A stretch of DNA of 64,000 bases from Zootoca vivipara. Its lineage: Eukaryota. A program made the position numbers and the translations under genes. Below are positions 17,691 to 59,599 of the stretch, in pieces (positions within the stretch are counted from its first letter, which is position 1; the number at the start of each line of letters is the position of its first letter). Below the pieces are notes generated by a model. The model ran no database searches and was not told the origin of the DNA. It was given only the letters and a program-made list of their open reading frames with translations. The stretch is taken from contig NC_083288.1 of NCBI RefSeq assembly GCF_963506605.1, positions 33,852,001 through 33,916,000 of the forward strand. Reading direction: 5' to 3'.

Positions 17691-26259
<8,569 letters not shown>

Positions 26260-27754
26260 GCTGGGGGCTGCTGAGCTTCCTCTCGTCCCTTCCAGGCTGG
26301 TTCTTGCAACAGGCCCCTGGCCGTCCCCTTCCCCCTCCGGAGGCTGCTGCCTCAGCGCTTTCCAAGCTAAGCGACACCCAGGTTGTACCCCAGCCAGAGT
26401 CCAGTGGGAGGCTCTTAAAGCGAAAGCCCCTCGGCTCGGCGTGTATTTTCCGCGTGCCTCTCTTGGCGAAGGAGCGAGTGGGTCAGACTTGTGCCTTTAA
26501 CCAGGAGTTGCATTTCCCCAGAGTTTAATTCGTGTTTGTGTGTGTGTTTTTTCTCTGTGTAATTGAAAAAATACAAGAGTGCCTCTTTCTGAGTACTAGC
26601 CAGGAGTACCACACCATGGGAGTAGCCAGGATTTTTGTTGGGGGGTGGGGCAGAACCTCGGATTTGTATTGATTTAGGGGGGCAGCTCGCTCCTCCTCTT
26701 GCCCCAGCCCATGTAGCGCACTTAGAGAATGCGGGACTGACATAACGCTAGATTCATATCAAATGAATTTGACCACGTGTCCATGGAGTCCAAAAATTGG
26801 TTCTTTATCAATGGTCAGCCAGAACACACTCGAAAGCTCAAAAGCAGGATGCATAATACCATGAGGTTGCTGTTGTGCTCAGAGCCTGATTGCAGATCCC
26901 GACCACTGTGAGAACAGGTCTGTGCTAGGTAGACCACTGGCCTTGATCGAACAGAGCTATTTTTATGTTCTTAAATAACTTCTCTAATGTTGTTTTCCAA
27001 AAGGAGTAATGCATGCTGTCCGCACAGGTCATTGCCAGATTTATAGGTGAAGATGAAGGGTTTATTCTATTTGAGTCAGCTATGGATAGTTGAGCAGATC
27101 TAGAAACAACACACACGCACCCCCCATCATACCATTTGGGGGTTCGATTCAGTCACATCCCAGTAAATTTAGGGTACATAGTTACAGTGGATTGGGAGGT
27201 CTTGTGCAAGAAACCTACTTCTAATAAAAGATTGGGCTTCTTACCATAAGGAAGGTGATTACTGGGGAGCAAATGCATTGGAAAGTGTGAGGTGACAAAT
27301 GTCTCCAGTCTCTCCTCAAATAAATCAGCATGGGTGGTCAACAAGCAGGTAATCTGCAAGCACCCAGGCACTCCTCAAGGTTGGCGCCCTCAACAGTTCC
27401 GTGTTGCCTCCTGTTTAATCCAACTCTGTCTCTACCCCACCAGGTTCCAGGCCCTGAGGCACTCAGAAATAGTAGATTCAGTCCCCCCCTCTCCACTGCC
27501 ATTCAGTACTGTACATGCAATGCCCTTCAACACAGTATTAATTCTGAAGCTGGTTTAATGGTTATAACATCCCCCCAGGGAATCCTGGGAATTAAGATGA
27601 TTTGTCAAGAGACTCTAAGCCCTATCACAGAGCTACAGTTTCCACATTTACTTGGATAATACGGTAAGTTTAAGCTAAATGGGTTTCAAGCCTATTTTGA
27701 TTTGCAGCAGTGCAGAAATGTGATCAGCGTGAGGGCTCTGGCGGGGGCAGGGGG

Positions 27755-27844
27755 CATAGCTGCCAAGTTATCCCTTTTTTAAAGGGATTTTCCCTTATGC
27801 TGAATAGGCTTCCTTGCGAGAAAAGGGAAAACTTGGCAGCTATG
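27755..27844. mobile_element. 90-bp hAT-type MITE inserted in the last exon of the IgV gene
   Basis: Same TIR as 25927-26016; perfect TSD GCAGGGGG (27747-27754 and 27845-27852). Confidence 0.9.
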
Positions 27845-29066
27845 GCAGGGGGGCAGCTTCAGGACTGCATCTTGTGGCACTCTTGCTGCTCACGAGCTCC
27901 TGGAGCTTGGCCTCAAGTTGCTTCACAGCTTCCACAATTTGACCCAGCTTGCTCAGGATATCTGGACGGCTGAGACATGGGGATGAAAGGGAATCTTCCA
28001 GCTGTTCCTCAGGGTCTGCAGGGAATTAAGTAAGATCAGCATCCAACACAGTAGGGTTAGAAATGAATTAATTAAACACCAAAATCAAAGCTGAGACTCT
28101 TGCGATGGACCCATCACCATCTTCTGTACTTCTCCCATGTGGAAACACAATCCATACAAATTCCGAAAACTTGATATTGCTACGCAGAATTACAAGGCAC
28201 CGTAGTAATGTTTAGGCATTGGCAAGTCTTTCTCCACCTCTGTTTGATATGGCTTTGTTAATAGCTACCGTACCTGCCTAGTCACCTGGGGTGATAAGGC
28301 ACACCACCTGCAGGCAAATCAAGGCAGGAGCTATTTGTATAGAAGAGAACAAAAGCCTTTCTTGTATGGTGCAAAATGTATGCCTTTAATGTACCCCAAA
28401 TTACTAACATTATGTGGGGAGCAGGGGGAAGACAGGTGAGTGTCTTTTTTTTGACATCTAAGATTTATAGATGTTAGCTAGGCTGACTTAATTTTTAAAA
28501 TGTGATTATAAACCCAATTAAACTGGAAATAAAATGAACCAATGTAGAAGGTAAAGGCTGCATATTGGAAGTTTCCAGAGGAAAACAAGCCTCCCTCTTT
28601 CGAAAGAAATGAAGGCTAGGAATAGATATTTACTGAAGGGGGTGGGAGTCAGAGAAAGAGCAGTGAAGAATGGGTGGAGATGGGTTTCTAGGATAGCCAC
28701 GCAATTCTGTGTCAACCTGTGGCTATTTGCTATTGATTGTAAATTATTTCACTTGGAATTGATGGGTGCGGTTTTGTTTGATTCTTTGCTGATATTGTGT
28801 AGATAATATCATCTTGTGGCTGTGTGTGAAAGGGATTCTGCAGCTGTTATACTCTGAATTATAAGAGGATGGCAAGGTGACTTTTGTTGTACATTTGGAT
28901 AATAATTGCCTTCAATCCAGCAATGTAGGAAATATAACTTTAAAAATGGAGCTGGGGAGATGAAAAAAAAATATATTATCGCCTGCCCCAGTAAAGAGTG
29001 CTGCATGATCCTGGGGCGTATTCCGAGGCAGCCAGACCTTAAAAGTAGTCCTGCTGGTGCTTGGTT

Positions 29067-29103
<37 letters not shown>

Positions 29104-31805
29104 ACCTGCCACACCATCCACCTCTCTTACCTGCAACTTGCAAAGTCACTTCCCGGATGCGCACTTCCGGCGTGTATGTGACGTAGCATCTGTAGTTGCC
29201 AGAGTTTCCAGTGCCAACCCGGGAGATGAGCAAGGACGCGTTGCCATTCCCCAGCTCTTCCCGGCTCAGGCTGACACCTTCCCTGGAGGTGGTCACCACA
29301 TCGTCAAATTCCGCCAGCTGCCTGCCCCGGTGGAACCAGAGGATTGTGAGTCGGCTGAGGTCCACGGTAGGCTCATCCACGGTAAAGATGCAATTCAGCA
29401 AGACATCATCTCCAACCGCAGCTTTCACCAGAGAGGGCTCGGCCTGCACTTGCAGCTTCCCGGCTGGGTCAAGCAACACAGAACAGACACATAAGAAGAG
29501 CACTCCTCTTCTTAGGAGTCAGGTCTCACAGTCAGCTGCCGTTTGGCAAGTGCTGAGAAATCAATGAATATGCAGGCATGTGCGAACTGGCCTTAGGGTG
29601 GCAGGCAGCGCATCCTACTTTATCGTTCCGTCTGGGTTGCTGCCTGCTTAACTGAGAAAGTACAACCATTAGACACCTGATAGCTCAGTTGGTTAGAGCA
29701 AGGTGCTGATGACACCAAGGTCGCAGGTTTGATCCCCATATGGGACAGTTGCACATTCCTGCATTGCAGGGGGTTGGACCATTGGGGTACCATTTCAGCT
29801 CTACAATTCCGTCTTCCATGTGACAAGGGCCTTGAAATGGACCATCAACACAGGTCAACAGTCTTCCCCAGGATGTTGAGATGGATTGCATTTTTGTTTC
29901 AATTATAGTGATTGTGTCTAGATTTTCATCCAAACATACAAATTAGCACATGCAGATTTTTACACAAATATATCTTTTTTAAAAAAAAGTTATGTGTTTC
30001 CTCTTTATCAGTGATGCCTATGTGGCTCTAAATAGAATGATTGGGGAAATCTAAGGACCATCTTAAACGGCATCAAACTGAGAAGCCATACAGCCAAAGA
30101 TCATCCGGTGATCGGTCTTCCATGGGCCATCTTGCTTAAATAGCTCAGTAAGTGAGCAGATCTCTTACTTGTAGACTGTCCTGGGTTCAATCCATGCATC
30201 TGTATCTAAAAGCCTACCAGCTAAGAGGGTCGAGAAGAGACTTTTTCCAAATCCTTGGAAGGCTCTTGCCAGTCAAGTTACCGTACGCACCAACAGGCTC
30301 CAATTCAGATAAGCCAACTTAACTTCATTCAGGGGGTGCTTCCAGGCTTTCACTGTATTTGGGTGGGATATAGTCACATACTGTACAGGTAAATTCAGGT
30401 CCCACAACTGCAATGGATTGGGAGGTCTCGTGCAACAAACCTCCTTCCCCAAAAGGCCAGACTTCTTGCGATAAGGAAAGTGACAAGGAAAGGCATCGAA
30501 AGCGTTGGATTGCACTTGCTTCGGTGCAAGGCCATCTAAACACCTCTCAAACAAATCGGGACAAATGAGCAGGTCATCTGGAAAGACCTTGAGTCACCCC
30601 AATGGTGTTGATTTGAAATAGGTTCAGGGCAAGCAAAAGTTTTTCTTTATGAAACACACAGTTTACTTAATTCCACATTAAAAGACTGCCAAATTATATT
30701 GATAATTGCCTAGCAGCAAAAACTGCCCACAAGATTGCAATCTATTGATATATATTGATGTATATATAACTGGGAAAATGGAATCCCCATGTTGAAAGGT
30801 AATGTACCTGTGTTAAAGTACTGAAAGGCTGGGAGCACCAGGTTGCTCCCCAGATGACTGACAGTAGTTAAAAACAATGTGTCTGGTGGTTCACAAGCAA
30901 GTCACAAAGACAACACTGTCCACCCCCTCCTCTCTGCTCCTTTCTCCAGCCCAGCAACACTTCATGCCAAGTGCCAGCCCCTACAACCACTCCACTTAAG
31001 TGGTTGCACATTGCTTTCCAGAATAATGGATAATTGTGAATAATACTGCTGTATTAAGGGACGAGGGTGGCACTGTGGGTTAAACCACAGAGCCTAGGGC
31101 TTGCTGATCAGAAGGTCGGCGGTTCGAATCCCCGCGACGGGGTGAGCTCCCGTTGCTCGGCCCCTGCTCCTGCCAACCTAGCAGTTCGAAAGCACGTCAA
31201 AGTGCAAGTAGATAAACAGGTACCGCTCCGTCGGGAAGGTAAACGCCGTTTCCGTGCGCTGCTCTGGTTTGCCAGAAGCGGCTTAGTCATGCTGGCCACA
31301 TGACCCGCAAGCTGTACGCCGGCTCCCTTGGCCAGTAAAGCGAGATGAGCACTGTAACTCCAGAGTTGTCTGCGACTGGACCTAACGGTCCGGGGTCCCT
31401 TTACCTTTACTGTTGTATTAAGACTGACTTCTTTGGGAAGTGGTGGGCACTCCTTGGCTGGAGTCTAGAGGACCATCTGCCCAGGGTGCTGCAGTCTGGA
31501 GATGGATAACCCATGGCCCTGCAGATGTTCTTGGACTCCCATCAGCCCCAGCCAACACAGCCAATGGTCATAGATGATGGGAATGTAGCCCAGACACATC
31601 TGGAGGGCCACTGGTACCACCAGCGACCTTGCAGTAGTGTCATCCTGCATTGAGCAGGTGGCTGAACTAGATCTTGGCCTCTAAAGTCTCTTCCAACTCT
31701 TAAGATGCCTTTGCTGCCCACCTCCTTCAATTTCAATGCAGGCAACTCACCGGCTTTTCCAAGGAAGCAGAAGGAGGTGAGGAAGATCAGTGTGAAGAAG
31801 CCCAT
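27840..31805 (-). CDS. Secreted single-IgV protein (B7/NCR3LG1-like V domain) with C-terminal coiled coil, 3 coding exons, 187 aa
   Basis: Exon 1 31805-31751 is a signal peptide MGFFTLIFLTSFCFLGKA (phase 1). Exon 2 29463-29131 is an IgV domain (VLLNCIF, ILWFHRG, GNASLLI, NSGNYRCYV; phase 1-1). Exon 3 28015-27840 reads DPEEQLEDSLSSPCLSRPDILSKLGQIVEAVKQLEAKLQELVSSKSATRCSPEAAPLP*. AATAAA on minus at 27061-27066. Exons 1-2 are solid; exon 3 is a strong prediction. Confidence 0.8.
29069..29101. repeat. (CA)n microsatellite
   Basis: Direct read. Confidence 0.95.
31058..31410 (+). mobile_element. Sauria SINE, full length
   Basis: Same family; TSD-like actgctgtattaa/actgttgtattaa. Confidence 0.9.
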
Positions 31806-32460
31806 CCCTGCAAGCAGTGGCTGTTCTTCTGGAGATTGTGGCAGTCCCTTACAGCACAGCAAAACACAGCCAAGGGGGCACGGCTTACGTGCCTGCTTCC
31901 ATTATCAGCAGAGACAGCAGAGTGTGTGGGCACCTCAACACTCTCTGGCACCCCAAGATAACGGGGTGTTTGTGCTTGCCTGGCACTGCCCCTGTGATCT
32001 CAACCCTTTCTATCTCGGTTGTTGTCCCTACCCAGTATTCCCGTGGTTATTATGCAAGAAACATCTGGCCTATCTTGAATGCCAGTGGCGACTTGGGTGG
32101 GGAATAAAAATGGCATTTGCCTCAGGCAGATATTCAGTTCAAGAACCTGGCTGCAGGGCATCACCCTCTGCCCCAAAGGTCTTGCGCCAAGAGGCTTGTG
32201 CTTACGAAACATATGGAAGATAAGATTAAGAGCGGCAGGGGCTGTGACTTGTTCCATATCCATCAGTGCATCCCAACTCCACGTAAGCAGAAGAGGTTCC
32301 CCCAACCAACGTTCCACTTAGACGCGAATGGAGGTGGGCAGGTGTGGGTATTATATGACTCTTGTTCACAAAATGAGCAGCAATACCTTCAGGACTCTGA
32401 ATTCAAGGAAAAGCAAAAATAAAATAATCCAGTAGCCTGCATCCCCATCATCCTCTACTG

Positions 32461-34480: not shown

Positions 34481-37400
34481 TCAGACATTCTCATAGTCCG
34501 GAGTGTCATCTTCACTTTCCCGATCACTGGTGCCACTGCCAACTACAGGAAAATGTAAGAGGACTTAAAATTACGACAGGGAGATATACGGCCCCACTCA
34601 TAGCCCTCAGGCAATTAGCCAGAGAACTGGATAATGAGGGGCTATAGGGAAATTAAATGAGTGTGTTGCTGAAGGGAAGAACTTCCTAGCAGGCCCACAC
34701 AGCAGGCTTTTTCTACTCACCAAAACAAGGACCCAGGATGGTAGCTTCTGGTTCTAGTACGTTGACATATTCACCTTTGACGGCGAGAGAAAATGGAAGA
34801 TTTAATTAAGGTTTAATGAAGGCAGGGAGGTCAACAGTAGGGGGAGCCAGACCCAGTGATGGGTGGAACCAACTCATTCTAGTTTTCTCCACACCCTTCC
34901 TTCCTGCTGAGTTTGACAAGGGCAACCCTGAAATTAAGGCAGAAGAGTCTAGCAGATGGCGATACCTCTTGGACCACTTGTAAGGAAGGAGGTCATTAAA
35001 AGGGGTTGGGCTGAGGACAGACTGAGCTTAGTGGGGAAGTGCTCTGCTTGTCCTGACAGACCACCCTTCACTGCACCCACCTCAGGAGTGCCTCTCCCTT
35101 GCTCAGTCACAGCAGAGACAGCATAAAGGAGCTGGTTTAACTCAAGAAGACCCGGTTTCAAGTCCCCTTTCACAACCACAAAGCTCCTTGATTCAGCCTC
35201 AGGGATGGACACATAAGCAGTAGTTTATGTGGGCCATCTGCTCAGCACAATTAAACCTGCAGCACCCAGCATTTTTATGATTTTTGCCAAGAAGGTGTAC
35301 TGCTTTGCAGGAGCTATGCAAATTATTATACTTTCTTCAAGAAATTGGAAGCAAGGGTGCTCATAGAAAGGTTTTTAAATATAAGTCTCCGGCAACTAGT
35401 GCAAAAGGGTTGGATCCAGCATTGGCTGGATCTTTCAGTTAGTTGCTTCTATCTGCAACCCTAAATGCCCTTACTAGGGAGTAAGCTCGACTGAATGCTC
35501 TGGGACACCAAAAAATGAACCTTCCACCCACCCGATTCTGCCTGGCCCTGATTCTGCCTAATGATACATCTAGCTGTGCCCGGCATGGCGTGTACAAACC
35601 CACCTCCATTTTCAATGCCATCCTATGCCCTCATTCCTGACTACCCGGGCCCCATAGATCTACTTTCCACACTCACCGGGCGAATTCCGCTCACACTCAA
35701 GCACATTCTCATACTGCCCCCCTAGGGAATCTGAAAAGGAAAAATCGGAAGCACTTTAAACACTGCCCTTTCCCAATTGTGTCCCATGTTACTTTCTCAT
35801 TTAGAATCACTGTGATGCAGCAGTGATGGCCAAACATGGCCCTCCAGCTGTTTTGGGACTACAATTCCCATCATCCCTGACCACTGGTCCTGTTAGCTAG
35901 GGATGATGGGAGTTGTAGTCCCCAAAACAGCTGGAGGGTCAAGTTGGCTATCACTGGGTTAGGGTGTTGCAGCAGGACCTGGGAGACCAGGGTTCAATCT
36001 CCACTCAGCCAAGGGGCTTATTGGGTGACCTTGGAGCAGGCACTGTCTCTTAGCCTAGCCTACTCTGCAGGGTTGCTGTGAGGATTGAATGGGAGAGGGG
36101 AGGAGCCGTTTACATCTGAGTTCCTTGGATGTAAGGTGGGAGAGAGATGAATGCTACATTTAGATGACCCTGAATTTTAAGACAGATAGGTTACCACCAT
36201 GCCCTCCAAGAGAACCCCAGCCCCGATGCCAGGAGGGAGTCAGTCCATCCCACCTGCTGCCAACTCACCTGTGGAAGCACCGTCTTCATTGCCTTGATCT
36301 GTAAGTGGTGCATCTGGCAGCACATCACTGGGGAAGAGAAGGGAAAAGAATCTTTGGTGCTGCGCTGATTCAAGAAATAAGCAGTTGACATGCTGAATGA
36401 AACCCAGCATTGCCTGCTCTGACTAGCAGCAGTTTTCTGAGGTCGAGGGCCAACACTGCTTATATATCTTCATTTGTACTGGAATTGCATTTTTAAGGTG
36501 TTTTTAGATGTTTTAGACATTTTATCGTTTGTGTCTTGCCATCCATTTATAACATATTAACTGCTGCTGGTTGAACATTTTTCATATTCCCCTGCCACCT
36601 TCCCTACTGCAAAATGCGCAATTTTTTTCCAAAGTGGATTTGATGTGCGAAAGCAGCGAAGTGCTTTGGTCCGCTGTAGTTGTGCAAATGTAAATTTGCC
36701 AGTATGCAGATTTAGAAAATGGAATCCGTTCTGCACAGTAGTGCAGATTTGGCTGGACTACAACTCCCATCACCCTTGGCCTTTGGCTGTGCTGGCTGGA
36801 GCTGATGGGAGCTGCAGTCCAACAACCACACATTCCCTATCCACTGCTTTAAGCAGTGAACAACACTGATTGAGCAAGCAGAAGAAAGGTGGTATATAAT
36901 CCATCAAGCAGAGATGCTGGGGATTTTATAGATGCAGAGTACGTAGTGTGCCAACAGGTTCCTATGAATGACCCAGCTAAAATCCATTATAAGGTTTGAC
37001 CTCTGACTCCCCCCCCCCAAAAAAAACACCAGACTTACATGTATGGAGGGACATAGTTGTCATCATTATCTTCATCATCAGTGGCACCAGCTTGTACTGG
37101 AAGCACAGAGACCGGATATGCATATGAGCTTACATTCACATATACTGGGAGCCCCCACCCCAACATTGAGCCAAAACCAGCCTGCGGAATCCAGTCACGA
37201 TGAGGCACAGTCAAGTCCAAGAGCACTGCAAAACTGCAGAGCGAGTAGATGACTCATGCAAGTGAGCTAAGCTGTATATTCCAGAAAGTGGCCTTAAAAC
37301 CAATAATTCCTACTCACCTTCACCTTGGTTTTCATAACTGGGAATGCTTTCTGAGATGGGGACATGCCACAAAGAGAAAAGGAGGGCACTGATTAAGCCT

Positions 37401-38096
37401 ACCGAGTGCCTGCAGCTTCCCAGACCAATGCCATTTGCCCCTCCCCCCCGTTTCTATTTCATAGAAGTAGACCTTCAAAAGGCTATTCATCCCAGTGGCT
37501 AGATTCCCTGACCTCAGCCTTTAAAGGCTTTGGTAGGAAAGAAGCCCCCCAATCCCTCCACTTCCTAAACCTTGCAAAAAGAAAAAAAACCCATTTCCTT
37601 CACAACTCACCATTATCCCTTTCAACTTTGTATGATGGTACTGGATAGGAAATACTGCATGGGGGGCATCTGCTGTGATTGTGAACAAAGAGGGAAAGGG
37701 GTTAATACAGGTACGAAAGTGGCCATGGAATAACAAGGGGACCAAGATGATGCTCCCAACATGCTTTTCTTATTCCAGCCATCACCCCCACTTTGACGAG
37801 GAATCCATAGGTGGTGGAAGAATGCCAACTGGAGATATTCTCTGAAGCTGAAGGCAAGTGATGCTTTTGCATCTAAATGTACTGTATATTCCTGCGTATA
37901 AGACTACATTTTAACCCAGGAAAATCTTCTCAAAAGTCGGGGGGGGGGTCGTAGGTTTTTTTAAAATTTTCTCTTATCAACTGCCCCGTGTGAAAGATAT
38001 TAGGGAGGTTTTTTACGTTTGATGTTTTATCATGTTTTTAATATTCTGTTGAGAGCCACCCAGAGTGGCTGGGGGGAAAACAAGCCAGATGGGTGG

Positions 38097-41300: not shown

Positions 41301-43247
41301 TGGCGCTGCGGGTTGCAAACGTGCCTCCCGCACGGATCACATTCGCAACCCGAGCGTCCACTCTAAAATAAGTAAGGAAATAGGCCCTATCGCCTCACCA
41401 CAGCTATTATATTAGTCTGAGGGAGGGGGTTCCCAATGAAAATTTGGAGAGGGGAGTCACATGCACAGCAGCTCATGGCTATTAAATAAACAAAACAAAA
41501 CAAAACCCCTGACATTCTCACAAATTAGTATCACATGTAGTTTGCTTCTGACTGGCAATGGGCCAAAAGATCATGCCGTGTTGAATTTAAGAGTATCAGA
41601 AGAGCCTACTAGATCAGGCCAATGGCCCATCTAGTCTGGCATCCTGTTCACAAAGTGGTCAACAGCACTTTCACTTCCTGTGGTTTCCAGCAACTGGTAT
41701 TCAGAAGCATTGTTGCCTCCAACTGTGGAGGTAGACCATAGCCATCAATGGCATTTCAGATCTAAAAGCTGTAAGTTTGGAGCAGAGGATATTGTTAGGA
41801 ATCCTGTAAGATTGTGGCTTGTCAAGGTGGTGGTGGTGCTGAGGCAGAACAGTGGGGCAGATTTGTTCAATGAGACCCCATATGGCTGTATCAGCTTCCC
41901 AGAGNNNNNNNNNNNNNNNNNNNNNNNNNNNNNNNNNNNNNNNNNNNNNNNNNNNNNNNNNNNNNNNNNNNNNNNNNNNNNNNNNNNNNNNNNNNNNNNN
42001 NNNNNNNNNNNNNNNNNNNNNNNNNNNNNNNNNNNNNNNNNNNNNNNNNNNNNNNNNNNNNNNNNNNNNNNNNNNNNNNNNNNNNNNNNNNNNNNNNNNN
42101 NNNNNNGAGACTACAAGCCAGCCTTTCAATTTAAAAATAGTACTGAATGGGCAGCTACTCACAGGGAGGACGTCGTATGTTGAAGGTTTTACTCCGTGCA
42201 CTAGTTGAAGGTCTGTGGGGGCAATGCATTAATCATTCTTCTTTTCACGGACAGTACAGGAATCATGCTTGAGAGACATATCACTCTGCTCCCCAAAACA
42301 GCACAAGAAACTCTCCCCTTCCAGGTTTTGGATGAAACATCAGAAGCTATTTTCTGCAGAGCCAGGCCATTGGCCAACCTCACTCTGTAGAGAACGGCCT
42401 GCACCATGGATGGGGAACCCCGGGCTCTCCAGCTACTGTTGGGACTCCCAACGTCCACCAGCCTCAAGCCCCACCCTCCCAATAGCCAGGGAGTATTATA
42501 GTCTAGCAACTTCCGGAAGGCCACAGGGTTCCTTATCCCTGGGGTCTACACTGACAGACATGGGCTGTACAAGGTTTCAGATCAGAGGCTTTCTCAGCCC
42601 TACTAGGAGATGCCAGGGACTGAACCTGGGACCTTCTGCATGCAAAGCACTTGAAAGAGTAGCATGCTAACACCACAAACAATTTCCCTTTCCTCCACTG
42701 TATCAAAAAGTGGCCTTCATGCAGTATCCATGTGCTTTGCGACTTTGGGAATTGTATATTAGAGTTGGGGTGAGGGGAGTAGACAGAAGGCAGGACCTCT
42801 GTACCTTCCTAGTGGTGCAAAAGAGAAGAAATGCACCTTTTCCTTCTGGGGTAGAAGCTGCCCGTTGCATCTGGCCACCTTAGAACATGCATCCATTTTC
42901 CAAACCCCTCCCCAAGCTCTGGTTTGCGCGCGCACACACACACACATACATTTTACCCCCAAAGTAAACCCCAATCAGTCACTAACTTACTTACTTGTAC
43001 TGGTAATCATCAACAGATGGTGCTGTTGTGAGAGAGGGAAAGAGACACCAATGTAATTAAGAAGTTCACTGGGGGGAGAGCAATGAATGGAGAAGTCGGG
43101 AACTGTTTGCTCCTCAGGGAAAGGAAGTTTGGGGAGGGCAGAAGAGACTTAACTGTCTAATTCAGGGTCCTGGCAGTCAATGCAAAGCACAAGTAGAATC
43201 GCCAGAAGTGGGACAGTAAATGCCAGCACCCAGAAGATGTCATCCAT
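34481..43247 (-). CDS. LAT: Linker for activation of T cells, 11 coding exons, 198 aa
   Basis: Exons (minus): 43247-43154, 43022-42995, 42212-42163, 38934-38892, 37672-37611, 37350-37318, 37096-37039, 36327-36269, 35730-35677, 34774-34721, 34542-34481 (597 nt). N-terminal TM plus CxxC (MDDIFWVLAFTVPLLAILLVLCIDC), then SQPD, SYENQ, YIDVLPD, YENV, YVNV and PDYENV*. Lies directly downstream of SPNS1 on the same strand, as in mammals. Confidence 0.93.
35821..35956. mobile_element. MITE with the same core, third TIR type, beside a SINE remnant
   Basis: CAGTGATGGCCAA...TTGGCTATCACTG ends around the shared ctacaattcccatcatccctgaccactggtc core. Confidence 0.75.
38099..38383. repeat. (AAT)n at 38099-38134 and (CA)n at ~38338-38383
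   Basis: Direct read. Confidence 0.9.
38515..38747. mobile_element. Tc1/mariner-type MITE
   Basis: TACAGTGGTACCTC...GAGGTACCATTGTA. Confidence 0.75.
40136..40326. mobile_element. GC-rich hAT-type MITE
   Basis: CAGTGGCGGAG...CTCCGCCTCTG ends; TSD CCAAGAGG. Confidence 0.8.
40610..40853. mobile_element. Tc1/mariner-type MITE (related element at 41117-41365)
   Basis: GTGGTACCTCGGGTTACG...CGTAACCCGAGGTAC inverted ends; CpG-rich GCGCATGCGC core. Confidence 0.75.
41905..42106. other. Assembly gap (N run) in LAT intron 3
   Basis: About 202 N. The flanking exon phases join without needing a hidden exon. Confidence 0.98.
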
Positions 43248-50844: not shown

Positions 50845-53800
50845 TCAGATCAGGACACTAGAAACAGGGACTTTGGTGGGTCGCCCACCCTGAGGAACAA
50901 CAATGCGATCTTCGCCTTCAGGTGACTCGTGAAATTGCCCTGCAGGGAGAAAGAGTATGGCAGGGTCAGAGGCTGTTTGTCCATGTTAGAGGAAAGGAGG
51001 CTCCTGGTTGTTTGTCCTCCCTTGATTTCCTACATGGTCATACACACTTCCTAACACACAGGACTTATCAAGACTTAAGACATGGGCCATCCCTGCTACT
51101 CAGAAATTGCTTTTGTTGCCACTCAGCTGCAGCCACTACAGCAAAGCCAAAAGCCTCCTCATGTAATTGCCCCAAAAGGTTTCTTCGTGGGGGACAAGGC
51201 ATTCTAAATCAAAAAGATGCTTCCAAAGTGAGGTGATAACAATTGCCGTCTCTTACAAACACTTTTTGGGCAATTTAAAATCACACAGGGAAGCTCCCTG
51301 GACACCCACATTTGGCATTGCCTTCCCTTTCCATCCTAACTCATAACTGGCTGTTACACCACACCATCCTTTTTCCAGGAAAGTTCTATTGTGCCACAGG
51401 AGAGGAGTGGCTTCCTCATGGCACAGAGCCACAATTGTTTTTGCTACTGGGGTGCCTGTTTGGTGCAGCAGTTCCGTGCCAGGCTTCATGGACCTTGACA
51501 TCTCAACTCTGACTGGCCAATGGAGGGAAGAGGTTTTACCTTGTACATACAGCTCTGTGCGCTTACGGTCTGCCTGGATGAAGCAAGCCGTAGCCAGGAA
51601 GAAGCCGCCACCAATAACCCCAACAAAGGCACAGACCATGAGCGCATATTCTAGGCTTCGGAACTGCGACAGGAATGTTTGGGGGCGATCATATTGGATT
51701 CGGTCACTGATCTGGAGAAGGGATTCAGCAAAAGAACACACACAACACACCATTATGCAGTGTCAAGTGGAGCGGCACAACTAATAGGAAAGCTGGCAGA
51801 ATTGGAAATTGGTGGTGTTTCCTAGCACATAGCAATTGATCACAGCTGAGGCAATGAGTGGAAAAAAAACCCACCCCTACTACTCAACCACTCTCTCTCT
51901 CCTCTGGTTTGTTGTGTGCTATTGCTCAAAACTCACTTAAAGGAATCGCAGCTGCAGTAGTTCTAAACCAACAAAATTCTTTCCAACATGTGGAAAACAG
52001 AGTATCTGCTAATGTTGTACAGTATATGTATCATTTATATCGATGCTGGCTTTTAACAAGAATGACTACAAAGTGGTTGACAGGCAATAGAACTATTTTA
52101 ACATTTTTCAAAGCCACACAGTAAATGCATATAAAATAAAAAATTATTTAATACGAATTTGAGAGCACACTTCCAGTTAACTCTCATAAGACCTGGCAAG
52201 ATAAACACATTTTTACACGCCTCCAAACACAGATTGGCAGGCAACATACAAGTAACATTTTGAGAGAGCCTTAGCTTCGGAGTCGCTATTAAGAAGGCCC
52301 TGCTCCCAAATGGAAAACAGTCTGTTCTTAAGATGATCACCCCGAAGCAGAGCTTCATCAGCTGAGCTTAGGTCTTGGGAGGTTAATATTGCACAAGGTT
52401 GCAATGCATCAATTTCCCTTGGCCTGAACAAACATTGCAGGATCAGCCTGGGCTGTTTTGGCCCAAGAAATACAGCTGTGAGAGCCAGTGTGGTGTAGTG
52501 GTTAAGAGCGATAGACTTGTAATCTGGGGAACCAGGTTCGCGTCTTCGCTCCTCCACATGCAGCTGCTGGGTGACCTTGGGCTAGTCACACTTCTTTGAA
52601 GTCTCTCAGCCCCATTCACCTCACAGAGTGTTTGTTGTGGGGGAGGAAGGGAAAGGAAGAATATTAGCTGCTTTGAGACTCCTTAGGGTAGTGATAAAGC
52701 GGGATATCAAATCCAAACTCTTCCTCTTCTTCTTGCAAAGTATGATCTAAGTGTTGGGAAAGAGAGCAAGCAGCTGATGGCAGAGAAAAGAGGAGCTGCT
52801 TGATGGGTAGAATGCCTCAGATGTCGCAAGCTTTGAAAAGCTGATCAGAAGTGCCTTCTCGCTGTCCCAAGCACTTACCAGGCCAATGAGATAAGGACTC
52901 CCAGCATCACCCAGAAGATGCGACAGCAGGATCTGAAAAGCTTCAGCTGTGGATCGGCGTGTGGGGATGACAACATACTGGGAAGAGAATAAAAGCTGAT
53001 TTACTGGTGCCCTCTGCTGGACAGCAAACAAGTTTTAAGGTCGCTTCCCCACATAACTATAAAGCCATTACAAGCCACTCTCTCACACACATTGCTAAGC
53101 CTCTTCTGGTTGCCCTTCACCTTGCTTTTATTCTATACCCGCTTTGGTGTCTTGCACACTCTTGCCAACTGAGGATTTCACTTAGCACATTTGACAAAGG
53201 GGACCAGAAGCCCCCAGAAGCTCATGCAGTCCTCTGTAGAAAAGCAGCAAAGAGGTGCAGTCCTGTATACCATGCCAACTGCCATACCAGACAGTAATTG
53301 TGGTAGTATAGCTATACACCGGTGAACCGTTGCGCCAGTGGATCTATGACACAGTGATACAGCCAAAATGGGATAGGGATTTGGGCAGGACAAGGGAGGA
53401 GAAACCATCATGTTGGAGCTGTAAGAAACAGTACACTGACTACCCTGCTATCTGCCATGGGCACAGAAGCCCTGGAGGGATGCCCAAGGTGCACACTTGC
53501 AGCAACACTTCTAACTCCTCCCTAGAGTAGGCCAGAATTATTGTTTCATTAGAGGGAAAGAGATTTGCCTAAGGATATCTTGTGAATTCTCAGCAGAACT
53601 AAGTTCTTTTTTTAAAAAAAAACCACTGTCAATGGACAGTTAAACTCAGGGCTGGCTCACTCTACTTGATTCACTCTGGCTACCACCACGTGAGAAGGCA
53701 AACGAGAACGGTGCAATTCTGCAACTGAAATAAAAGTCTAATGTTTTGCACACTGCCTCTTCCCCACAGTCTCACCAGAAGGATGTCCGCCACTATGGCC

Positions 53801-56800
53801 CAGTTGAGGGAGAGGAGGGTCTCACCAATGAAGATAAATACCTGCAGAGGAAGGAGGAGTGAAGAGGAGAGACGGCATTATTTTTGTTTTAAAAATCCTT
53901 TTAATTTTTTTTAAAGATTCCAAAGCAGTGTACAAAAGTTTAAAAAGAAGAAGAGGAGTTTGGATTTGACATCCCGCTTTATCACTACCCAAAGGAGTCT
54001 CAAAGCGGCTAACATTCTCCTTTCCCTCCCCCCCCCCAGCTGCATGTGGAGGAGCGGAGACGCGAACCCAGTTCCCCAGATTCTACTGCTCTTAACCACT
54101 ACACCACACTGGCATAGGACAGGCAATGGTGGGACAGGCAACGGTACCCACCATGCCACACCATGGACACTGCCACAAGAAAGCTGGCAGCACCCTCGGT
54201 GGCTGTACCAAATTAACAATTGAAACTTGGGGCAAACTCACGTAGGTGGCAACGATGCTCTGCTTAGCGGTCACCACTGCTAGGAACAGGAAGGGGACAG
54301 AGCCCAGCAGTCCAGTTGCACACACCAGGGGATCAGCACGAGGGTTGGTGCGGCGCCAGCGCCGGGAAATCTCCACCCCAGCACTGACACCCAGCACACC
54401 AGTCACACAAGTGATGACGCCAAAGGTGAGGCTGCAGAGATAACGATATGAAGAATTAATAAAAGCACCGCAGAGAAGGCTCAGAGCACTTCACATATGG
54501 TACACCCCACATTGCAGATGGGAGGATGAGAGACAGCAGCATGCCTAAGGCCATCTAGCAAGTTTACTGCAGGGGCAAGATTCAAGATTTGGGGCATCCC
54601 CATTTGTGACAGTCTCTTAGCCCTTATACTACAAACAGCTCAGAGTTAAGAAACACAGAGGTTTCAAAAGACAGCAGTGGTGAACCTCCACTGCTCAGCC
54701 AAGTGTTCCTCAAGAGAGAGCTGAACTGATGTCATGACTGAGGGCTTTCTCGGCTACTAACTCACCTATCAGAGTCAGAAGCATGTCCTGAGGGAGAAGG
54801 CAGGAGAGTGCCAGCTGCCAGGCGTGAGCGGTACAGGAAAGTTGGTGTCCACAGAGCCAGGGAGCCTGTCACAAAGGCCACAGCTGTGAAGCCTAGTGAT
54901 GACAATATGAAACTGCGACTGTCCATGGGGGGGGGGGAGAGAGAGAGAGAGAGGAAATGTGAGCATAAAACAATAGCCCTAATCATTCCTGCAGTCAAGC
55001 AATTGGAACCATCACAGATCTATTGCAACATAACTTTCCTATGACCTCACCTACAAGAGAGTTGGCTCACCTATTCACAGCTGTAAAAATACAGAGAAAT
55101 CGAACTATAGGCAACCAGGGATGAGCCAGTCCTTAGAAACACTCAGTCATCCCATGGCAGGATCTCTTTTAGGTCACAGTTTGCCCACCTGTAATAGTGA
55201 TGGCACAAGTAGCAAGGTGTTCTCCAGCTCAGGTGGTTACTAGGAGAAAATAACCATACCAGGGAACTGCAACTGGGGACAATTTGTGAAACGCAGTCTG
55301 TAGTGTGCCACTGCCTCCTACAGAGAACATTGCTGATGGCACATCACATCTGCAGAGGGCCACAACCCTAGGCCTAAAGCCTGGGCAGGGGAGAACATTT
55401 TCTGTCAAGGGCTTTATATTCTTGGGTATAAGCTCTTGGGGGCCACATGCCAGGTAGGGTCAGGGCCAGAGGCAATGATGGACAAGGCTACCCCTTTCCT
55501 CTCTCCTTCTCCTCACCTTGTTTCCTATCTAGCAGGCTACTGCAGTGAGGACAGAGCACTCTTATCAGAGGGCTTTTATCACTTCCTCCCTCACTCCATT
55601 TCGCCCTTCCCTCAGTCCCCATTTCCCCACTCCAGCAGTGGCAGACTTTGGGCACTCAAATTTCAGCAGTGCCCTGGGTGCTAAATCTGGCGCCCCCTGT
55701 CTGCCACAGAATTGTTCTACAGAGTAGCACCCAGTACAAACACACCAGTCATACTACCCTAAAACAACCTCTGCCGCAGGACTTCTTTTCTCTAATCATA
55801 TGAAGCTGAGAGCCTCATGAAATTAGGTCAAAGGCTGCATAATGGGCCTTGGACCACAGGCTCCCCACCCCTGTCTTAAAGCAACTCCTTTTCAAGCTAC
55901 TGCACTAGCCTGTTGGCCCTTATTATGTTACAAAGAATGCTGGGGCACTTTCTCGTGGATTAAACAAGTCATCGGCCAGGCCTGCTGGACCTGGTGCGAT
56001 TTAAGCACACACCCTAGAACACATCTCAAGTCTCAACATCTGCTTATAACTGCAGGGGAAGACTGATAATAGTGGACAAGCTTATGCTCAAGGGAACCTT
56101 CGCTGCCATTACCAATTTCCTTAATTAAGTTCCCCAATACTCTGAAGAACCAAATTTCAAAACCACCTCCATAAAGCACTCTGGATAGGTACCTGTCAGT
56201 ATTGCTTTAAAAGCTGCCACAAGAAAGAAGACTGTACAGATTTTCCCTAAGTGGTTTGTTTTGCTTCTCAGTTTCTTGTCCTTTCGCTATCACTAAAGAG
56301 AATATCTACACTGATCTGGAATCAATGAAACTAGGGCAAGAAAGCTACACCTCGGTTTACGAATTTTCGGTTTACGAACGCCTCGGACCCATCTGGAACA
56401 AATTCACTTTCCATTACTTTCAATGGGAAAGTTCGCTTCAGTTTATGAACGCTTCAGTTTATGAATAGACTTCCGGCACCAATTACACCCATGCTTCAGG
56501 TTAAGTACACTTCAGGTTGTGTACTCCGCGGACCCATCTGGAACGGATTAATACACTTTCCATTACTTTCAATGGGAAAGTTTGCTTCAGTTTATGAACG
56601 CTTCAGTTTAAGTACTCCGCAGCAAGCCTGGAACAGATTAATCCATTTTCCATTACTTTCAATGGGAAAGTTCGCTTCAGTTTATGAACGCTTCAGTTTA
56701 TGAACAGACTTCCAGAACCAATTGTGTTCATAAACCGAGGTACCACTGTATTCCGGAGCAATGCAGAAAAGAAAGGTGGGATGTGGCCTACATGGCAGCA

Positions 56801-59120
56801 GTGCATTAAACGGCACCCATTACTCACTTGCGGCTCAGGGCCCGCAGGTCAGCTGCCCAGGAAGTATACTGCAGAGGGGCATCTGAGTGCGTCTCCACAG
56901 TTCCCCGAGGCGGCTCACGCACCACAGTTATCAACAGTATCACCGCCAACGCTCCCAGGGCTGGTGTCACCTGTATGAGAAGATAATGATCTAAGTTGGA
57001 GGCATTCTAAACAGAAGAAAATAAAAACATGTATGCATAGGTGCACAGCAGACAAGCTTACTACAATGTGATGAAGATGAGCTGAACTGCAACATCATAA
57101 GGCAACAAACACCAACCAGTACAATTGTATCCCCACCCTACTCACCCGCAGGGCCCAATGCCAGTCGTCAGCCACATCTTTCACCTTTGAACCCACTATG
57201 TAGCCCAGTCCACTGCAGGTGAAAAGGGAGAACAGTCAGACCCCCCACTCAGGCAGGCTCCCCTCTTTCTGTGAAAGCCAATTAGGTTTGGTCATTGCAA
57301 CAATGGGGGAATGCCAGAGATCAGCGGTAGAGCACCTGCCTTGCATGCAGAAAATCCCAGGTTCACTTTCCAGCATCTCCAGGTAGGGCTGGGAAAAGAG
57401 CCCTGCTTGAAAGCCTGGAGAGCTGCTGCCAGTCAGTGTAGACAATACTGAGCTAAATGGGCCAATGGTCTGAATCAGTTATATAAGGCAGCTTCCTATG
57501 CTCCTATTCCATGGCTTATGTCATGAACACACACATTGTGCTTTGATTGTTGCATAATGTGCTTTGATTGTTCCATAAGCCTGATTGTCAATTTACAGTA
57601 AACAGATTAGTATCTCCAGTTCAACTTCACTACAGTGCATACCCCACCCTAAAACAGACCACAGGGTGTTCGCACCTGCCCACAGGTATGGCGAAGTAGA
57701 AGATGCTGAGCATGCGGGATCGGCGGTCACCCACAAACAGATCAGCAATAATGGTGGGGGCAATAGTTGAGTAGCTGGCCTCTCCTACACCCACCATGCC
57801 TCGTGTCAGCAGCAACAGCCAGAACATCTAATGTGGAGAAAACAAACAAACTGAGGAAATGTAATAGTGTAGCTATAAATCTGAAACACACCCCTAAAGA
57901 ACCTCAGGACATGCAGTCATGTATGGGTGCAAAGAATACTTTGTCAAGTACTGTATTCTTAACCCTTCTCAGAATTACAGTTCCTAGGATTCCTTGTTTG
58001 GTAGCTGTGAGTGTCAAGAACAGGTTTCAAACCTGTTCAGCAGTACTTTATAAATAGCCACTTTTCTGTGGCTTGTGACAAGTCAATCATGCACAAGGCC
58101 TTCCAAAACCGTTTCTTATCGGCTAGCAAATGTTTGTGATTTTATCCAGAGTTCAGCTTAATGACACACAGCTTAAATTGAAGGAAAGCATTGCATCTTC
58201 CCAATCTCAGAGGGCAGCTGTGCCAGATCTCCCCTGCCCCATAAGCCTCAATGCTGGGGGGTGGAAGGGAAGACACACAGATCCCAAACCCAAAGTTCTT
58301 CCCCATGCCTGGGTGAAAACTAATCTACAGAATCTTCTCCCCTGCCCCCATACCTCCTTGGGAATGTAGCTGCTCCCCAGCGTCACTATTGACCAGAAGG
58401 TGATCCCAATGCACATCAGGTATTTGCGATTATAGCGATCCCCCAGGTAACCGAAAATTGGTGCAAGCACCATATAGCTACTAATAAAAACTGAGAAGAA
58501 ATAAATAATTATTTCCAGTGGCAAACACTCCTGCTTCAATAGCACTGCCCTTACGAAGTGCCTGGGTTGCGGGTGGGGAAGAACCAAGCCCCATCACCCT
58601 ACTCACCTGTTTGTAGGAGCCCTGATTTGCTATCATCAATGTTAAAAAATGCCTCAATGTCAGGAAGAACGCCTGAGGTAAGGAAGAAGGATTACAGCAT
58701 TAATACTTGGGAAAGACAACTAAGTATCCTCACCCCAAAACAATCCATCATGCCCATAATTATTTAAAATTAAGGATTAATGTTTTTGGGGAGAAAACCA
58801 ACCCCTCATCGCTTTAAAACTTACAGCGCCCACCCTCCTGACACAGCCAGGAAGAGAAGCCTAAAGTTCCAGCTACCGTCCCATAGCACCCCAGCACCCT
58901 TACCAGCCACAGTGAAGCGGTCCATGTAGTTCAGTAGGTTAACAAAGCAGAGAACTCCCACAATGAAGCCAGCCCGTGTAGAGGAGATGCCCGTGAGGGT
59001 CTGTACCTCTTCTTCCCCTTCATGCCCAGTTTGCAGACCATCCTTTCCCTCTTCCTCTGTGTCATCTGCCTGGGTCAGGATTGGGGCTGTATCCACGTAA
59101 GGTTGCCGCTGAGATGCCAT
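50845..59120 (-). CDS. SPNS1: Protein spinster homolog 1 (lysosomal MFS transporter), 12 coding exons, 518 aa
   Basis: Exons (minus): 59120-58904, 58672-58607, 58490-58354, 57827-57676, 57212-57146, 56970-56828, 54918-54766, 54431-54242, 53841-53776, 52977-52879, 51711-51540, 50939-50845 (1557 nt). Motifs [63 protein letters not shown], and SPNS1-type C-terminus [20 protein letters not shown]. Confidence 0.97.
52480..52732 (+). mobile_element. tRNA-derived SINE (second family)
   Basis: GAGAGCCAGTGTGGTGTAGTGGTTAAGAGC head, GGTTCG B box, CTT-rich tail. Confidence 0.8.
53948..54112 (-). mobile_element. Internally deleted copy of the second SINE family
   Basis: Aligns to 3988-4230 with the middle missing. 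Confidence 0.75.
56346..56750. mobile_element. Tc1/mariner-type MITE with three internal repeats
   Basis: ACCTCGGTTTA...TAAACCGAGGTACCACTGTA ends; TTTCCATTACTTTCAATGGGAAAGTT-type block occurs three times. Confidence 0.75.
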
Positions 59121-59599
59121 GGCCAGCGGCAAGAAGAACCCACTGGAGAGACAATATGAGATAGCCAGCCCCTTACAAACCCTAAAGAACTGCAGGGGAG
59201 AACAGCAAAAGGTCGCCTTTGGCAAGTAACCAGTCTTATGGCAGTTACTGAGGAGCTTAACTAGGGCGAGAAAAGCAGACCAGAAGAAGACGACCAGAAG
59301 AGAAAGTCAGTCAGTAATACAAATGCAAAACACACCCACTGTTCAGCATTATATTCTCATTTCCCACTCCTTTATTATTTTTATTTTTTATTACATACAT
59401 ATATTGCTATAATGTAAACAAAGCCAGAGATGAATTTAAGCGTAGTTACTCAGAGTCACATCTCGGACTGAAGGGAGAAAAATGACAACAGGCCCCTTAC
59501 TCCGCCAAGCCTGACCTCACCCTGAAGCTATAATTAACCTGTAGCCCCCCCGAAACCCCCTTTCCCCTCCAATTCTAACCTGAGAGTTACCTAGGGAGG

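What the first reader, a model, noticed from the sequence alone, without database searches (positions are those of the whole stretch)
27840..31805. Unnamed secreted B7/NCR3LG1-like IgV protein with a cysteine-flanked coiled coil, directly downstream of LAT
Seen: three phase-1-linked exons encode a signal peptide, one IgV domain and a 58-aa tail. The tail has an uninterrupted 4-3 heptad (I-L-I-V-L-L-L in DILSKLGQIVEAVKQLEAKLQEL, 27959-27894) bracketed by two extra Cys. I found no IgC, TM or GPI-signal exon before the polyA signal and the ADPRH promoter. Known: B7-family ligands (CD80, NCR3LG1/B7-H6) are normally IgV-IgC-TM membrane proteins, and I recall no such gene beside mammalian LAT. Inference: a natively soluble, probably disulfide-stabilised oligomeric IgV, acting as an avidity-enhanced ligand, decoy or serum pattern-binding protein. 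This would be a reptile immune component that is poorly described or undescribed.
Basis: partly seen in the sequence, partly recalled or inferred. Interest (0 to 1): 0.85.

Follow-up and report, generated by a model that had tools for sequence, protein, structure and literature searches.

The report
Secreted B7-like IgV with helical tail
This lizard gene is real, expressed and spliced as predicted, and it encodes a small secreted B7-type immunoglobulin domain with a conserved helical tail; it belongs to an uncharacterised protein family found in amphibians, turtles and lizards but not found here in mammals or birds.

Summary
Three minus-strand exons (31805-31751, 29463-29131, 28015-27840) have canonical GT..AG borders. 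RNA reads from two runs and a 559-nt spliced contig from a third join them exactly as predicted. No read joins the IgV exon to another exon. The window holds no IgC exon.

The IgV is B7-type, nearest to CD276, then PD-L1, then VTCN1.

The same build (signal peptide, one IgV, acidic linker, roughly 25-30-residue amphipathic helix) recurs in about 25 proteins from lizards, an amphisbaenian, turtles (two paralogs), frogs, salamanders and caecilians. RefSeq gives them at least seven different automatic names. I found no paper on them.

Seven heptad core positions are 81-100% hydrophobic across 16 species. AlphaFold2 models a confident long helix. Every member has at least one cysteine beside the helix, but the pair is not conserved.

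Self-association is inferred, not shown.

The family is older and wider than "reptile". The stop codon lies in a 90-bp MITE that removed only six residues.

Verdict: a new variant of a known kind, of moderate to high interest.

The parts
31751..31805 (-). Exon 1, coding part: start codon and signal peptide (MGFFTLIFLTSFCFLGKA plus the first base of an Ala codon). The donor GTGAGT follows.
   Evidence: RNA joint 29463|31751 in X21 and in the X1 contig. 84% identical to the N-terminus of the Podarcis lilfordi ortholog.
29464..31750 (-). Intron 1 (2287 nt, GT..AG). It carries multi-copy SINE-like repeats at about 31066-31410 and 29602-29798.
   Evidence: 'skips 2287', ends CT..AC on the + strand. 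Very high read depth with many loose ends over the repeats.
29131..29463 (-). Exon 2: one B7-type IgV domain (111 codons, phase 1-1) with the conserved GNASL glycosylation motif and the YRCY F-strand.
   Evidence: 95.5% identical to P0152. RNA depth in X20, X21 and X1.
28016..29130 (-). Intron 2 (1115 nt, GT..AG). A (GT)n microsatellite at 29057-29111 lies just after the donor.
   Evidence: 'skips 1115' in X20, X21 and X1..
27840..28015 (-). Exon 3, coding part: acidic linker (DPEEQLEDS), Cys14, amphipathic heptad helix, Cys50, short Pro/Ala end, TAG.
   Evidence: 87.5% identical to P0152.
27891..27962 (-). Heptad helix DILSKLGQIVEAVKQLEAKLQELV. Position a holds L24, V31, L38. Position d holds I20, I27, L34, L41. 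Position e holds L21, V28, V42.
   Evidence: period 3.5; core columns 81-100% hydrophobic in 16 species. AlphaFold2 helix with block pLDDT about 90 in the ortholog.
27975..27977 (-). Cys14 of the tail, five residues before the helix.
   Evidence: Present in most but not all orthologs.
27867..27869 (-). Cys50 of the tail, eight residues after the helix.
   Evidence: Conserved in all squamates sampled, absent in turtle type-A proteins.
27755..27844 (.). 90-bp MITE with 24-nt inverted ends (96% complementary) and an 8-bp target duplication CCCCCTGC. It supplies the TAG stop and the start of the 3'UTR.
   Evidence: Hundreds to more than a thousand read loose ends per run exactly at 27754/27755 and 27844/27845. 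Without it the frame would read ...PLPPPEPSR*, which matches the ...APEPSR* end of P0152.
27045..27839 (-). 3'UTR of about 0.8 kb; the end is approximate.
   Evidence: Reads with first mate on + from 27041 to 27828 in X20 and X21, and an X1 contig at 27133-27780.
27061..27066 (-). AATAAA polyadenylation signal.
   Evidence: RNA cover stops just beyond it.

Best explanation
This is a functional three-exon gene for a secreted protein of about 187 aa. The protein has a signal peptide, one B7-family IgV domain, a short acidic linker, and a C-terminal amphipathic heptad helix flanked by cysteine. It belongs to an uncharacterised orthologous family found in amphibians, turtles and squamates. Shown: the exons, their splicing, strand-specific expression that differs between samples, the lack of any IgC, TM or GPI part, the B7-type V domain, and conservation of the helix's hydrophobic seam across amphibians and reptiles. 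Inferred: the helix forms a parallel coiled coil that joins two to four chains, locked by interchain disulfide(s) through the flanking Cys. The resulting multivalent soluble V domain binds a cell-surface IgSF receptor through the conserved C-C'/F-G face. It would act as a humoral co-signalling ligand or as a blocker of a membrane-bound ligand.
For: Splicing, strand and absence of other joints come. No IgC exon is in the window. The IgV is confirmed (CD276 6e-22, PD-L1 about 3e-14, VTCN1 7e-10, PD-L2, B7-H6) and by Foldseek, where the top hits are PD-L1 IgV with target-normalised TM 0.87. About 25 proteins of about 170-255 aa share the architecture. A tail-only HMM finds the tail in all of them, including 10 not used to build it (E 1e-5 to 1e-27), and in none of the other proteins fetched, about 155. 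Heptad score: 0 of 500 shuffles reach it in 11 of the 17 tails scored (the window's and 16 orthologs'), and at most 17 of 500 in the others. Seven core columns are 81-100% hydrophobic, and the periodicity peaks at 3.5. AlphaFold2 gives IgV pLDDT above 90 plus helix 146-176 (block pLDDT about 90) in the Podarcis ortholog, and helix 140-182 in a frog member. At least one Cys flanks the helix in every member. The three nonsynonymous variants seen among individuals in the RNA (Q4E, Q32R, A54V) spare the core and the Cys. The most conserved stretch of the family is the C-C' hairpin (QWFHRGxQxAEFD) and the F strand.
Against: Oligomerisation is not demonstrated. The helix has only about 3.5 heptads. 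The Cys pair is not conserved. The e positions are partly hydrophobic, so the number and orientation of chains cannot be read from the sequence. No receptor is known. The tissues of the RNA runs are coded, so an immune role is assumed only from family resemblance. Tail sequence identity is low between classes (22-27%).
Confidence: 0.55

Rival explanations
1. The helix is a docking element for a different protein, not a self-association domain. The partner could be a membrane-anchored or matrix protein, or the adjacent paralog product in turtles. The secreted IgV would then be displayed on a surface or work as a heteromer.
For: The hydrophobic face is wide (a, d and e positions). Turtles keep two adjacent paralogs with different helices. 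Cys positions vary between lineages.
Against: Squamates and most amphibians sampled here show one gene of this type, so a paralog partner is not general. No candidate partner is known.
Confidence: 0.2
2. The protein is secreted but is not an immune co-signalling molecule. It could be a tissue-specific secretion (gland, reproductive tract, skin or egg) that reuses a B7-like V domain as a binding module.
For: Expression differs strongly between samples: none in X19, low in X20 and X21, and depth 65.8 in the small X1 data set. The tail evolves quickly. No immune context was tested.
Against: The V domain is closest to the co-signalling B7s, and its C-C'/F-G face is the best conserved part. The gene sits beside LAT, but linkage is not function.
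Confidence: 0.17
3. The gene is a truncated remnant or minor soluble splice form of an ordinary IgV-IgC-TM B7 gene, and exon 3 is an accidental open frame.
For: The nearest coelacanth relatives are IgV-IgC-TM, and the nearest lungfish relatives are multi-IgV arrays or end in a hydrophobic segment. Soluble splice forms of mammalian B7s are known (general knowledge).
Against: Exon 3 is used in every spliced read and contig. No IgC or TM exon lies in the 64 kb. The tail is conserved from frogs to lizards with heptad-specific constraint.
Confidence: 0.03

Closest known systems
B7-H3 (CD276), PD-L1 (CD274), B7-H4 (VTCN1): B7-family co-signalling ligands
   Same: The membrane-distal IgV is of the same sequence type. 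It shares the GNASL motif before strand E and Y-x-C-x-(V/I) in strand F. The signal and IgV exons are phase 1. The family profile matches CD276 at 6e-22, PD-L1 at about 3e-14 and VTCN1 at 7e-10. Foldseek gives target-normalised TM 0.87 to PD-L1 IgV.
   Different: It has no IgC domain, transmembrane segment or cytoplasmic tail. Instead a dedicated terminal exon encodes an acidic linker and a heptad helix. Solubility is built into the gene, not produced by shedding or alternative splicing. It is not an ortholog of any named B7; identity is about 25-30%.
Disulfide-locked coiled-coil oligomerisation modules of secreted proteins (matrilin C-terminal coiled coil, COMP/thrombospondin N-terminal coiled coil, C4BP C-terminal core, collectin neck)
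   Same: This is a resemblance in working principle, taken from established knowledge of those proteins. A short amphipathic heptad helix next to cysteine(s) turns a binding domain into a covalent multimer and raises avidity.
   Different: No sequence relationship was detected. Pfam (which includes the matrilin coiled-coil family, PF10393, by my recollection), the PDB sequences and the ESM Atlas gave nothing for the tail. The Cys number and position differ and vary between lineages. The oligomer state is unknown.
Coelacanth and lungfish 'tapasin-related protein-like', 'CD276-like' and 'PD-L1-like' genes (P0056, P0060, P0036, P0075, P0007)
   Same: These are the closest V domains outside tetrapods (39-46% identity). 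In the lungfish protein P0075 the D-P junction after the V domain is the same.
   Different: They continue into IgC domain(s) and a TM segment, or into a hydrophobic C-terminus (P0075). None has the helical tail.
Butyrophilins (BTN/BTNL)
   Same: They have a B7-related IgV, and they contain heptad-repeat segments (PMC12841164).
   Different: The butyrophilin heptads are cytoplasmic and lie after a TM segment, and the proteins have IgC and B30.2 domains. None of these is present here.

Membership tests
B7 family (CD80/86, PD-L1/2, B7-H2/3/4/6/7) | N-terminal IgV domain of B7 sequence type | tested here: met
   Single sequence: CD276 (about 1.3e-5 for each of its two IgV domains), PD-L1 1.3e-5, VTCN1 1.2e-4. 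Family profile: CD276 6e-22, PD-L1 about 3e-14, VTCN1 7e-10, PD-L2 2.6e-9, B7-H6 5e-9. The top Foldseek hits are all PD-L1 IgV.
B7 family | Membrane-proximal IgC domain (IgV-IgC ectodomain) | tested here: not met
   No IgC exon is in the transcript or in the 64-kb window (tblastn with IgV-IgC relatives). Orthologs are 170-255 aa with a single Ig domain.
B7 family | Type I transmembrane (or GPI) anchoring | tested here: not met
   The open frame ends in exon 3 with a hydrophilic ...RCSPEAAPLP*. The orthologs' C-termini have no hydrophobic stretch.
B7 family | Exon plan: signal-peptide exon and IgV exon joined in phase 1 | tested here: met
   Both junctions are phase 1 and are confirmed by RNA.
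B7 family | Binds a CD28-family or other IgSF receptor on lymphocytes | not testable with these tools
   No receptor candidate was tested; this needs binding experiments.
Coiled-coil oligomerisation domain with interchain disulfides (matrilin, COMP or C4BP type) | Uninterrupted heptad repeat of at least 3 heptads with a hydrophobic a/d core | tested here: met
   3.5 heptads. The a/d positions are I, L, I, V, L, L, L. 0 of 500 shuffles reach the score. The pattern is conserved in 16 species. AlphaFold2 models a helix.
Coiled-coil oligomerisation domain with interchain disulfides | Conserved cysteine(s) next to the coil | tested here: inconclusive
   Every member has at least one flanking Cys, but which side varies, and only some have both.
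Coiled-coil oligomerisation domain with interchain disulfides | Sequence homology to a known oligomerisation family | tested here: not met
   No hit reached significance in Pfam; the best were noise at E 0.08-0.2. PDB sequences gave nothing, and the ESM Atlas gave nothing for the orthologous Podarcis tail.
Coiled-coil oligomerisation domain with interchain disulfides | Self-association | tested here: inconclusive
   The one complex job (two copies of exon 3) returned 'no answer'. This is evidence neither for nor against.
Butyrophilin | IgV-IgC-TM-B30.2 architecture | tested here: not met
   The transcript and orthologs hold only one IgV and no TM or B30.2.

The most novel reading that the evidence does not exclude
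A soluble B7 dating at least to the tetrapod ancestor: a dedicated, covalently multimerised secreted B7-family ligand kept for more than 300 million years in amphibians, turtles and squamates, and lost, or changed beyond recognition, in mammals, birds and crocodilians. It would act as a humoral co-signalling ligand. Its receptor could be one of the CD28-family members reported as present in non-mammalian vertebrates but missing in mammals (PMC11599192).
Probability: 0.3. Interest if true: 0.8.

Novelty: new variant of a known kind. Interest (0 to 1): 0.62.

Why it matters
B7 ligands are the textbook membrane-bound partners of CD28-family checkpoint receptors. Their soluble forms in mammals are by-products of shedding or alternative splicing. 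Here the solubility and a probable multimerising tail are built into the gene and conserved from frogs to lizards. That points to a humoral arm of B7-type signalling that the mammalian models lack.

The finding also gives a single identity to a family that genome annotation currently scatters over at least seven unrelated names: PD-L1, PD-L1-like, CD276-like, VTCN1-like, NCR3LG1-like, tapasin-related-like and obscurin-like. Some of these could mislead comparative studies of PD-L1 or B7-H6.

The tail itself is a compact exon of about 60 residues with no detectable relative. If it does multimerise, it would be a new natural oligomerisation tag.

Tried and rejected
1. Complex prediction with two copies of exon 3 returned 'no answer' (score 0.02). 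It is no evidence for or against binding. Only one job was allowed, so 3- to 6-mers were not tried.

Synteny of the orthologs (LAT/SPNS1 or ADPRH neighbours in other species) could therefore not be tested. The only indirect hints are shared contigs and consecutive accession numbers for the two turtle paralogs.

3. The joined, spliced protein of the window was not built or searched. The exons were searched separately by reference. The Podarcis lilfordi ortholog P0152 (95.5% identical in exon 2, 87.5% in exon 3) stood in for the full-length protein in alignments and folding.

4. For the tail, Pfam, PDB sequences and the ESM Atlas (queried with the orthologous Podarcis tail) gave nothing.

5. Five literature searches, two full-text look-ups (PMC12151841, PMC11599192) and one look-up in the butyrophilin paper (PMC12841164) found no mention of this family. 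Flajnik et al. 2012 (PMC3709836) is not held, so a mention there cannot be excluded.

6. CD80 orthology was considered because human CD80 lies beside ADPRH (from my memory). It was rejected. CD80 and CD86 do not appear among the significant PDB matches shown, whereas CD276, PD-L1 and VTCN1 do. The architecture also differs.

7. The chance-ORF and pseudogene readings are rejected.

Full report
**Anatomy**

The minus strand between 31805 and 27840 carries three open segments.
- Exon 1 (31805-31751) starts at GCAGGGATGG, encodes the hydrophobic leader MGFFTLIFLTSFCFLGKA, and ends one base into a codon before GTGAGT.
- Exon 2 (29463-29131, 333 nt) follows a pyrimidine-rich ...CCCAG acceptor. It completes an Ala codon, encodes 110 residues, and ends one base into a codon before GTAAGA.
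- Exon 3 (28015-27840) follows ...CCTGCAG. It completes an Asp codon and encodes PEEQLEDSLSSPCLSRPDILSKLGQIVEAVKQLEAKLQELVSSKSATRCSPEAAPLP, then TAG.

Exon 2 matches Pfam V-set, I-set and ig above their cut-offs.

**Expression and splicing**

One reads call was allowed. Three stranded RNA-seq runs of the same species label and one set of Logan contigs were laid on 26450-32350.
- Joint 28015|29131 (skips 1115, GT..AG on the minus strand) is seen in X20 (6 reads, 3 starts), X21 (5 reads, 4 starts) and an X1 contig.
- Joint 29463|31751 (skips 2287) is seen in X21 (6 reads, 5 starts) and the same contig.
- That contig (559 nt, depth 65.8) runs from exon 1 through exon 2 and exon 3, past the stop, to 27820.
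- All supporting reads have the first mate on +, as expected for a minus-strand RNA in a standard stranded library.
- No other joint leaves the IgV exon.
- X19 has no reads on the exons, so expression differs between samples. Their tissues are coded and unknown to me.
- Reads continue through a 3'UTR to about 27041, just past an AATAAA at 27066-27061.

tblastn with coelacanth IgV-IgC-TM relatives finds only the IgV exon in the 64 kb. The protein therefore ends in exon 3. It has no IgC, no TM and no hydrophobic C-terminus.

**Neighbours**

LAT-type exons with YxN motifs (YENQ, YENV, YVNV) lie at 34716-37453 on the minus strand. MFS-type exons that I read as SPNS1 lie at about 51300-59300 on the minus strand; only one was tested, below Pfam's cut-off, so the name rests on my reading. 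The first coding exon of an ADP-ribosylglycohydrolase (PF03747, E 1.9e-10) lies at 24387-24659 on the minus strand. From memory, its sequence looks like ADPRH.

**What the V domain is**

- Against PDB sequences, the exon-2 peptide is closest to CD276 (about 1.3e-5 for each of its two IgV domains), PD-L1 (1.3e-5) and VTCN1.
- A profile of the family gives CD276 6e-22, PD-L1 about 3e-14, VTCN1 7e-10, PD-L2 2.6e-9 and B7-H6 5e-9.
- The AlphaFold2 model of the ortholog superposes best on PD-L1 IgV domains (target-normalised TM 0.87, rmsd 1.6 Å, 28% identity).

It is a B7-family V domain but not an ortholog of any named B7.

**The family**

An exhaustive HMMER search of 1.84 billion representatives with exon 2, two word-indexed searches and cluster look-ups found about 25 proteins of about 170-255 aa with the same build. 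They come from:
- Squamates: Podarcis lilfordi, Anolis carolinensis, A. sagrei (two), Elgaria, Hemicordylus, Sphaerodactylus, and the amphisbaenian Rhineura.
- Turtles: Emydura, Gopherus, Dermochelys, Malaclemys (complete tails); the Chelonoidis model (P0176) lacks the tail. Two paralog types occur; where both were seen (Emydura, Gopherus, Dermochelys) they lie on the same contig or chromosome.
- Frogs: Ascaphus, Pelodytes, Mixophyes, Rhinophrynus.
- A salamander (Pleurodeles), plus an unnamed Logan contig (P0020) closest to it.
- The caecilian Geotrypetes (two proteins).

P. lilfordi P0152 is 95.5%, 87.5% and 84% identical to exons 2, 3 and 1, so the window comes from a close lacertid relative.

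RefSeq names for these proteins include 'PD-L1', 'PD-L1-like', 'CD276 antigen-like', 'VTCN1-like', 'NCR3LG1-like', 'tapasin-related protein-like', 'obscurin-like' and 'uncharacterized'.

An HMM built from the tail alone recovers every member, including ten not used to build it (E 1e-5 to 1e-27). It recovers none of the other proteins fetched, about 155.

Nothing with the tail came from birds, crocodilians, mammals, snakes or fishes. This is absence of detection, not proof of loss; one search scored only the 8000 best candidates. The nearest coelacanth relatives are IgV-IgC(-IgC)-TM. The nearest lungfish relatives are multi-IgV arrays, or an IgV followed by a hydrophobic end.

**The tail**

Aligned across 16 species, the tail has three parts:
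- a nearly invariant D-P start and an acidic linker;
- usually a Cys;
- an amphipathic helix, usually followed by a second Cys.

Seven columns are 81-100% hydrophobic while the columns between them vary freely. The hydrophobicity profile peaks at a period of 3.5-3.6. In 11 of the 17 tails scored (the window's and 16 orthologs'), none of 500 shuffles reaches the observed heptad score; the others have at most 17 of 500.

In the window protein, position a holds L24, V31 and L38. Position d holds I20, I27, L34 and L41. Position e is also partly hydrophobic (L21, V28, V42). The seam is therefore wide, and the number or orientation of chains cannot be read from the sequence.

AlphaFold2 gives a confident IgV (pLDDT above 90) and one long helix. 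The helix spans residues 146-176 (block pLDDT about 90) in the Podarcis protein and 140-182 (pLDDT 60-72) in a frog protein.

Tail identity is lower than IgV identity: 54% against 66% within squamates, and 22% against 40% between squamates and amphibians. What is conserved is the pattern, not the letters.

The two cysteines are not a conserved pair. Hemicordylus and Sphaerodactylus lack the first. Turtle type-A proteins and Pelodytes lack the second. Turtle type-B proteins other than Emydura (which has two) have three. Every member has at least one.

Variants among the RNA runs give three nonsynonymous changes in exon 3 (Q4E, Q32R, A54V) and three synonymous ones. None touches the core or a Cys.

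**Mechanism**

Shown: the protein is secreted by design, with one B7-type V domain and a conserved amphipathic helix.

Inferred: the helix self-associates as a coiled coil and the flanking Cys forms interchain disulfide(s). This would give a covalent multimer whose V domains bind a cell-surface receptor with raised avidity, as agonist or blocker.

A parallel arrangement fits best with the lineages that keep only one Cys, because an antiparallel dimer would need both. The C-C' hairpin (QWFHRGxQxAEFD) and the F strand are the best conserved parts of the V domain. In PD-L1 that sheet is the receptor-binding face, from established structural knowledge.

The one complex prediction allowed gave no verdict and counts for nothing.

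The rivals are hetero-association through the helix, a non-immune secretory role, and a truncated remnant. The last is contradicted by the data.

**The stop codon**

The stop lies inside a 90-bp MITE at 27755-27844. The MITE has 24-nt inverted ends (96% complementary) and an 8-bp duplication CCCCCTGC. A second copy sits at 25927-26016. Hundreds to more than a thousand reads per run from other copies end exactly at its borders.

Without the MITE the frame would read ...PLPPPEPSR*, which matches the ...APEPSR* end of P. lilfordi. The insertion replaced the last seven residues by one Pro, a net loss of six, well after the helix and Cys50. This supports the scan's note s1-855506.

**Novelty**

I found no paper on this family. 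One relevant review of B7 evolution is not held. The tail has no match in Pfam or the PDB, nor (tested with the orthologous Podarcis tail) in the ESM Atlas.

Gene models exist in RefSeq, so the gene is annotated but unrecognised as a family. I class it as a new variant of a known kind: a B7-family V domain in a natively soluble, helix-tailed architecture that dates at least to the tetrapod ancestor.

**Limits**

- No codon-level selection test was possible.
- The tissues of the RNA runs are unknown.

Noticed in passing
window 27755-27844 and 25927-26016: Two copies of a 90-bp MITE with CATAGCTGCCAAGTT... inverted ends. The first supplies the TAG of the IgV gene, is flanked by an 8-bp duplication CCCCCTGC, and replaced the last seven residues by one Pro (a net loss of six). 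The second lies just upstream of the ADPRH-like gene. RNA reads from many other copies end exactly at the element's borders.
   Followed up: yes
window about 31066-31410 and 29602-29798 (intron 1): SINE-like multi-copy repeats. Read depth is up to hundreds, with many variants, back-joints and loose ends, so the reads come from copies elsewhere in the transcriptome. This explains most of the 'share of words' held by small RNA runs.
   Followed up: partly
window 29057-29111: A (GT)n microsatellite begins about 20 bases after the exon 2 donor. The reads tool skipped it as a repeat.
   Followed up: no
window 27853, 27919, 28004 (exon 3): Fixed differences between the RNA runs and the assembly give A54V, Q32R and Q4E in the tail, alongside three synonymous sites. 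Exon 2 shows only two synonymous differences. This fits a faster-evolving tail, but the numbers are small.
   Followed up: partly
P0016/P0051 (Emydura), P0158/P0180 (Gopherus), Dermochelys LOC119857454/LOC119857210: Turtles carry two paralogs of the family on the same contig or chromosome. Type B has a longer helix; it has three cysteines in Gopherus, Dermochelys and Malaclemys and two in Emydura, and a GC-rich, Ala/Arg-rich sequence. Heteromers are conceivable.
   Followed up: partly
P0006 (Elgaria isoform X2), P0013 (Rhineura isoform X2), P0015, P0017, P0021, P0024, P0176 (turtles): Several database isoforms replace the helical tail with unrelated, low-complexity sequence directly after the IgV. 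They look like intron-retention or mis-spliced models rather than real alternative tails.
   Followed up: no
window 11095-11592 (+): Two open stretches with WD40 beta-propeller matches (weak, below Pfam's cut-offs) look like exons of a WD-repeat gene on the plus strand. The gene was not identified.
   Followed up: partly
window 61219-63790 (+): Long open frames of 371, 287 and 236 aa look like a non-LTR retrotransposon (endonuclease and reverse transcriptase). They lie in an AT-rich stretch at the window's end.
   Followed up: no
window 41905-42106: A run of 202 N (assembly gap or masked stretch). It was left untouched.
   Followed up: no
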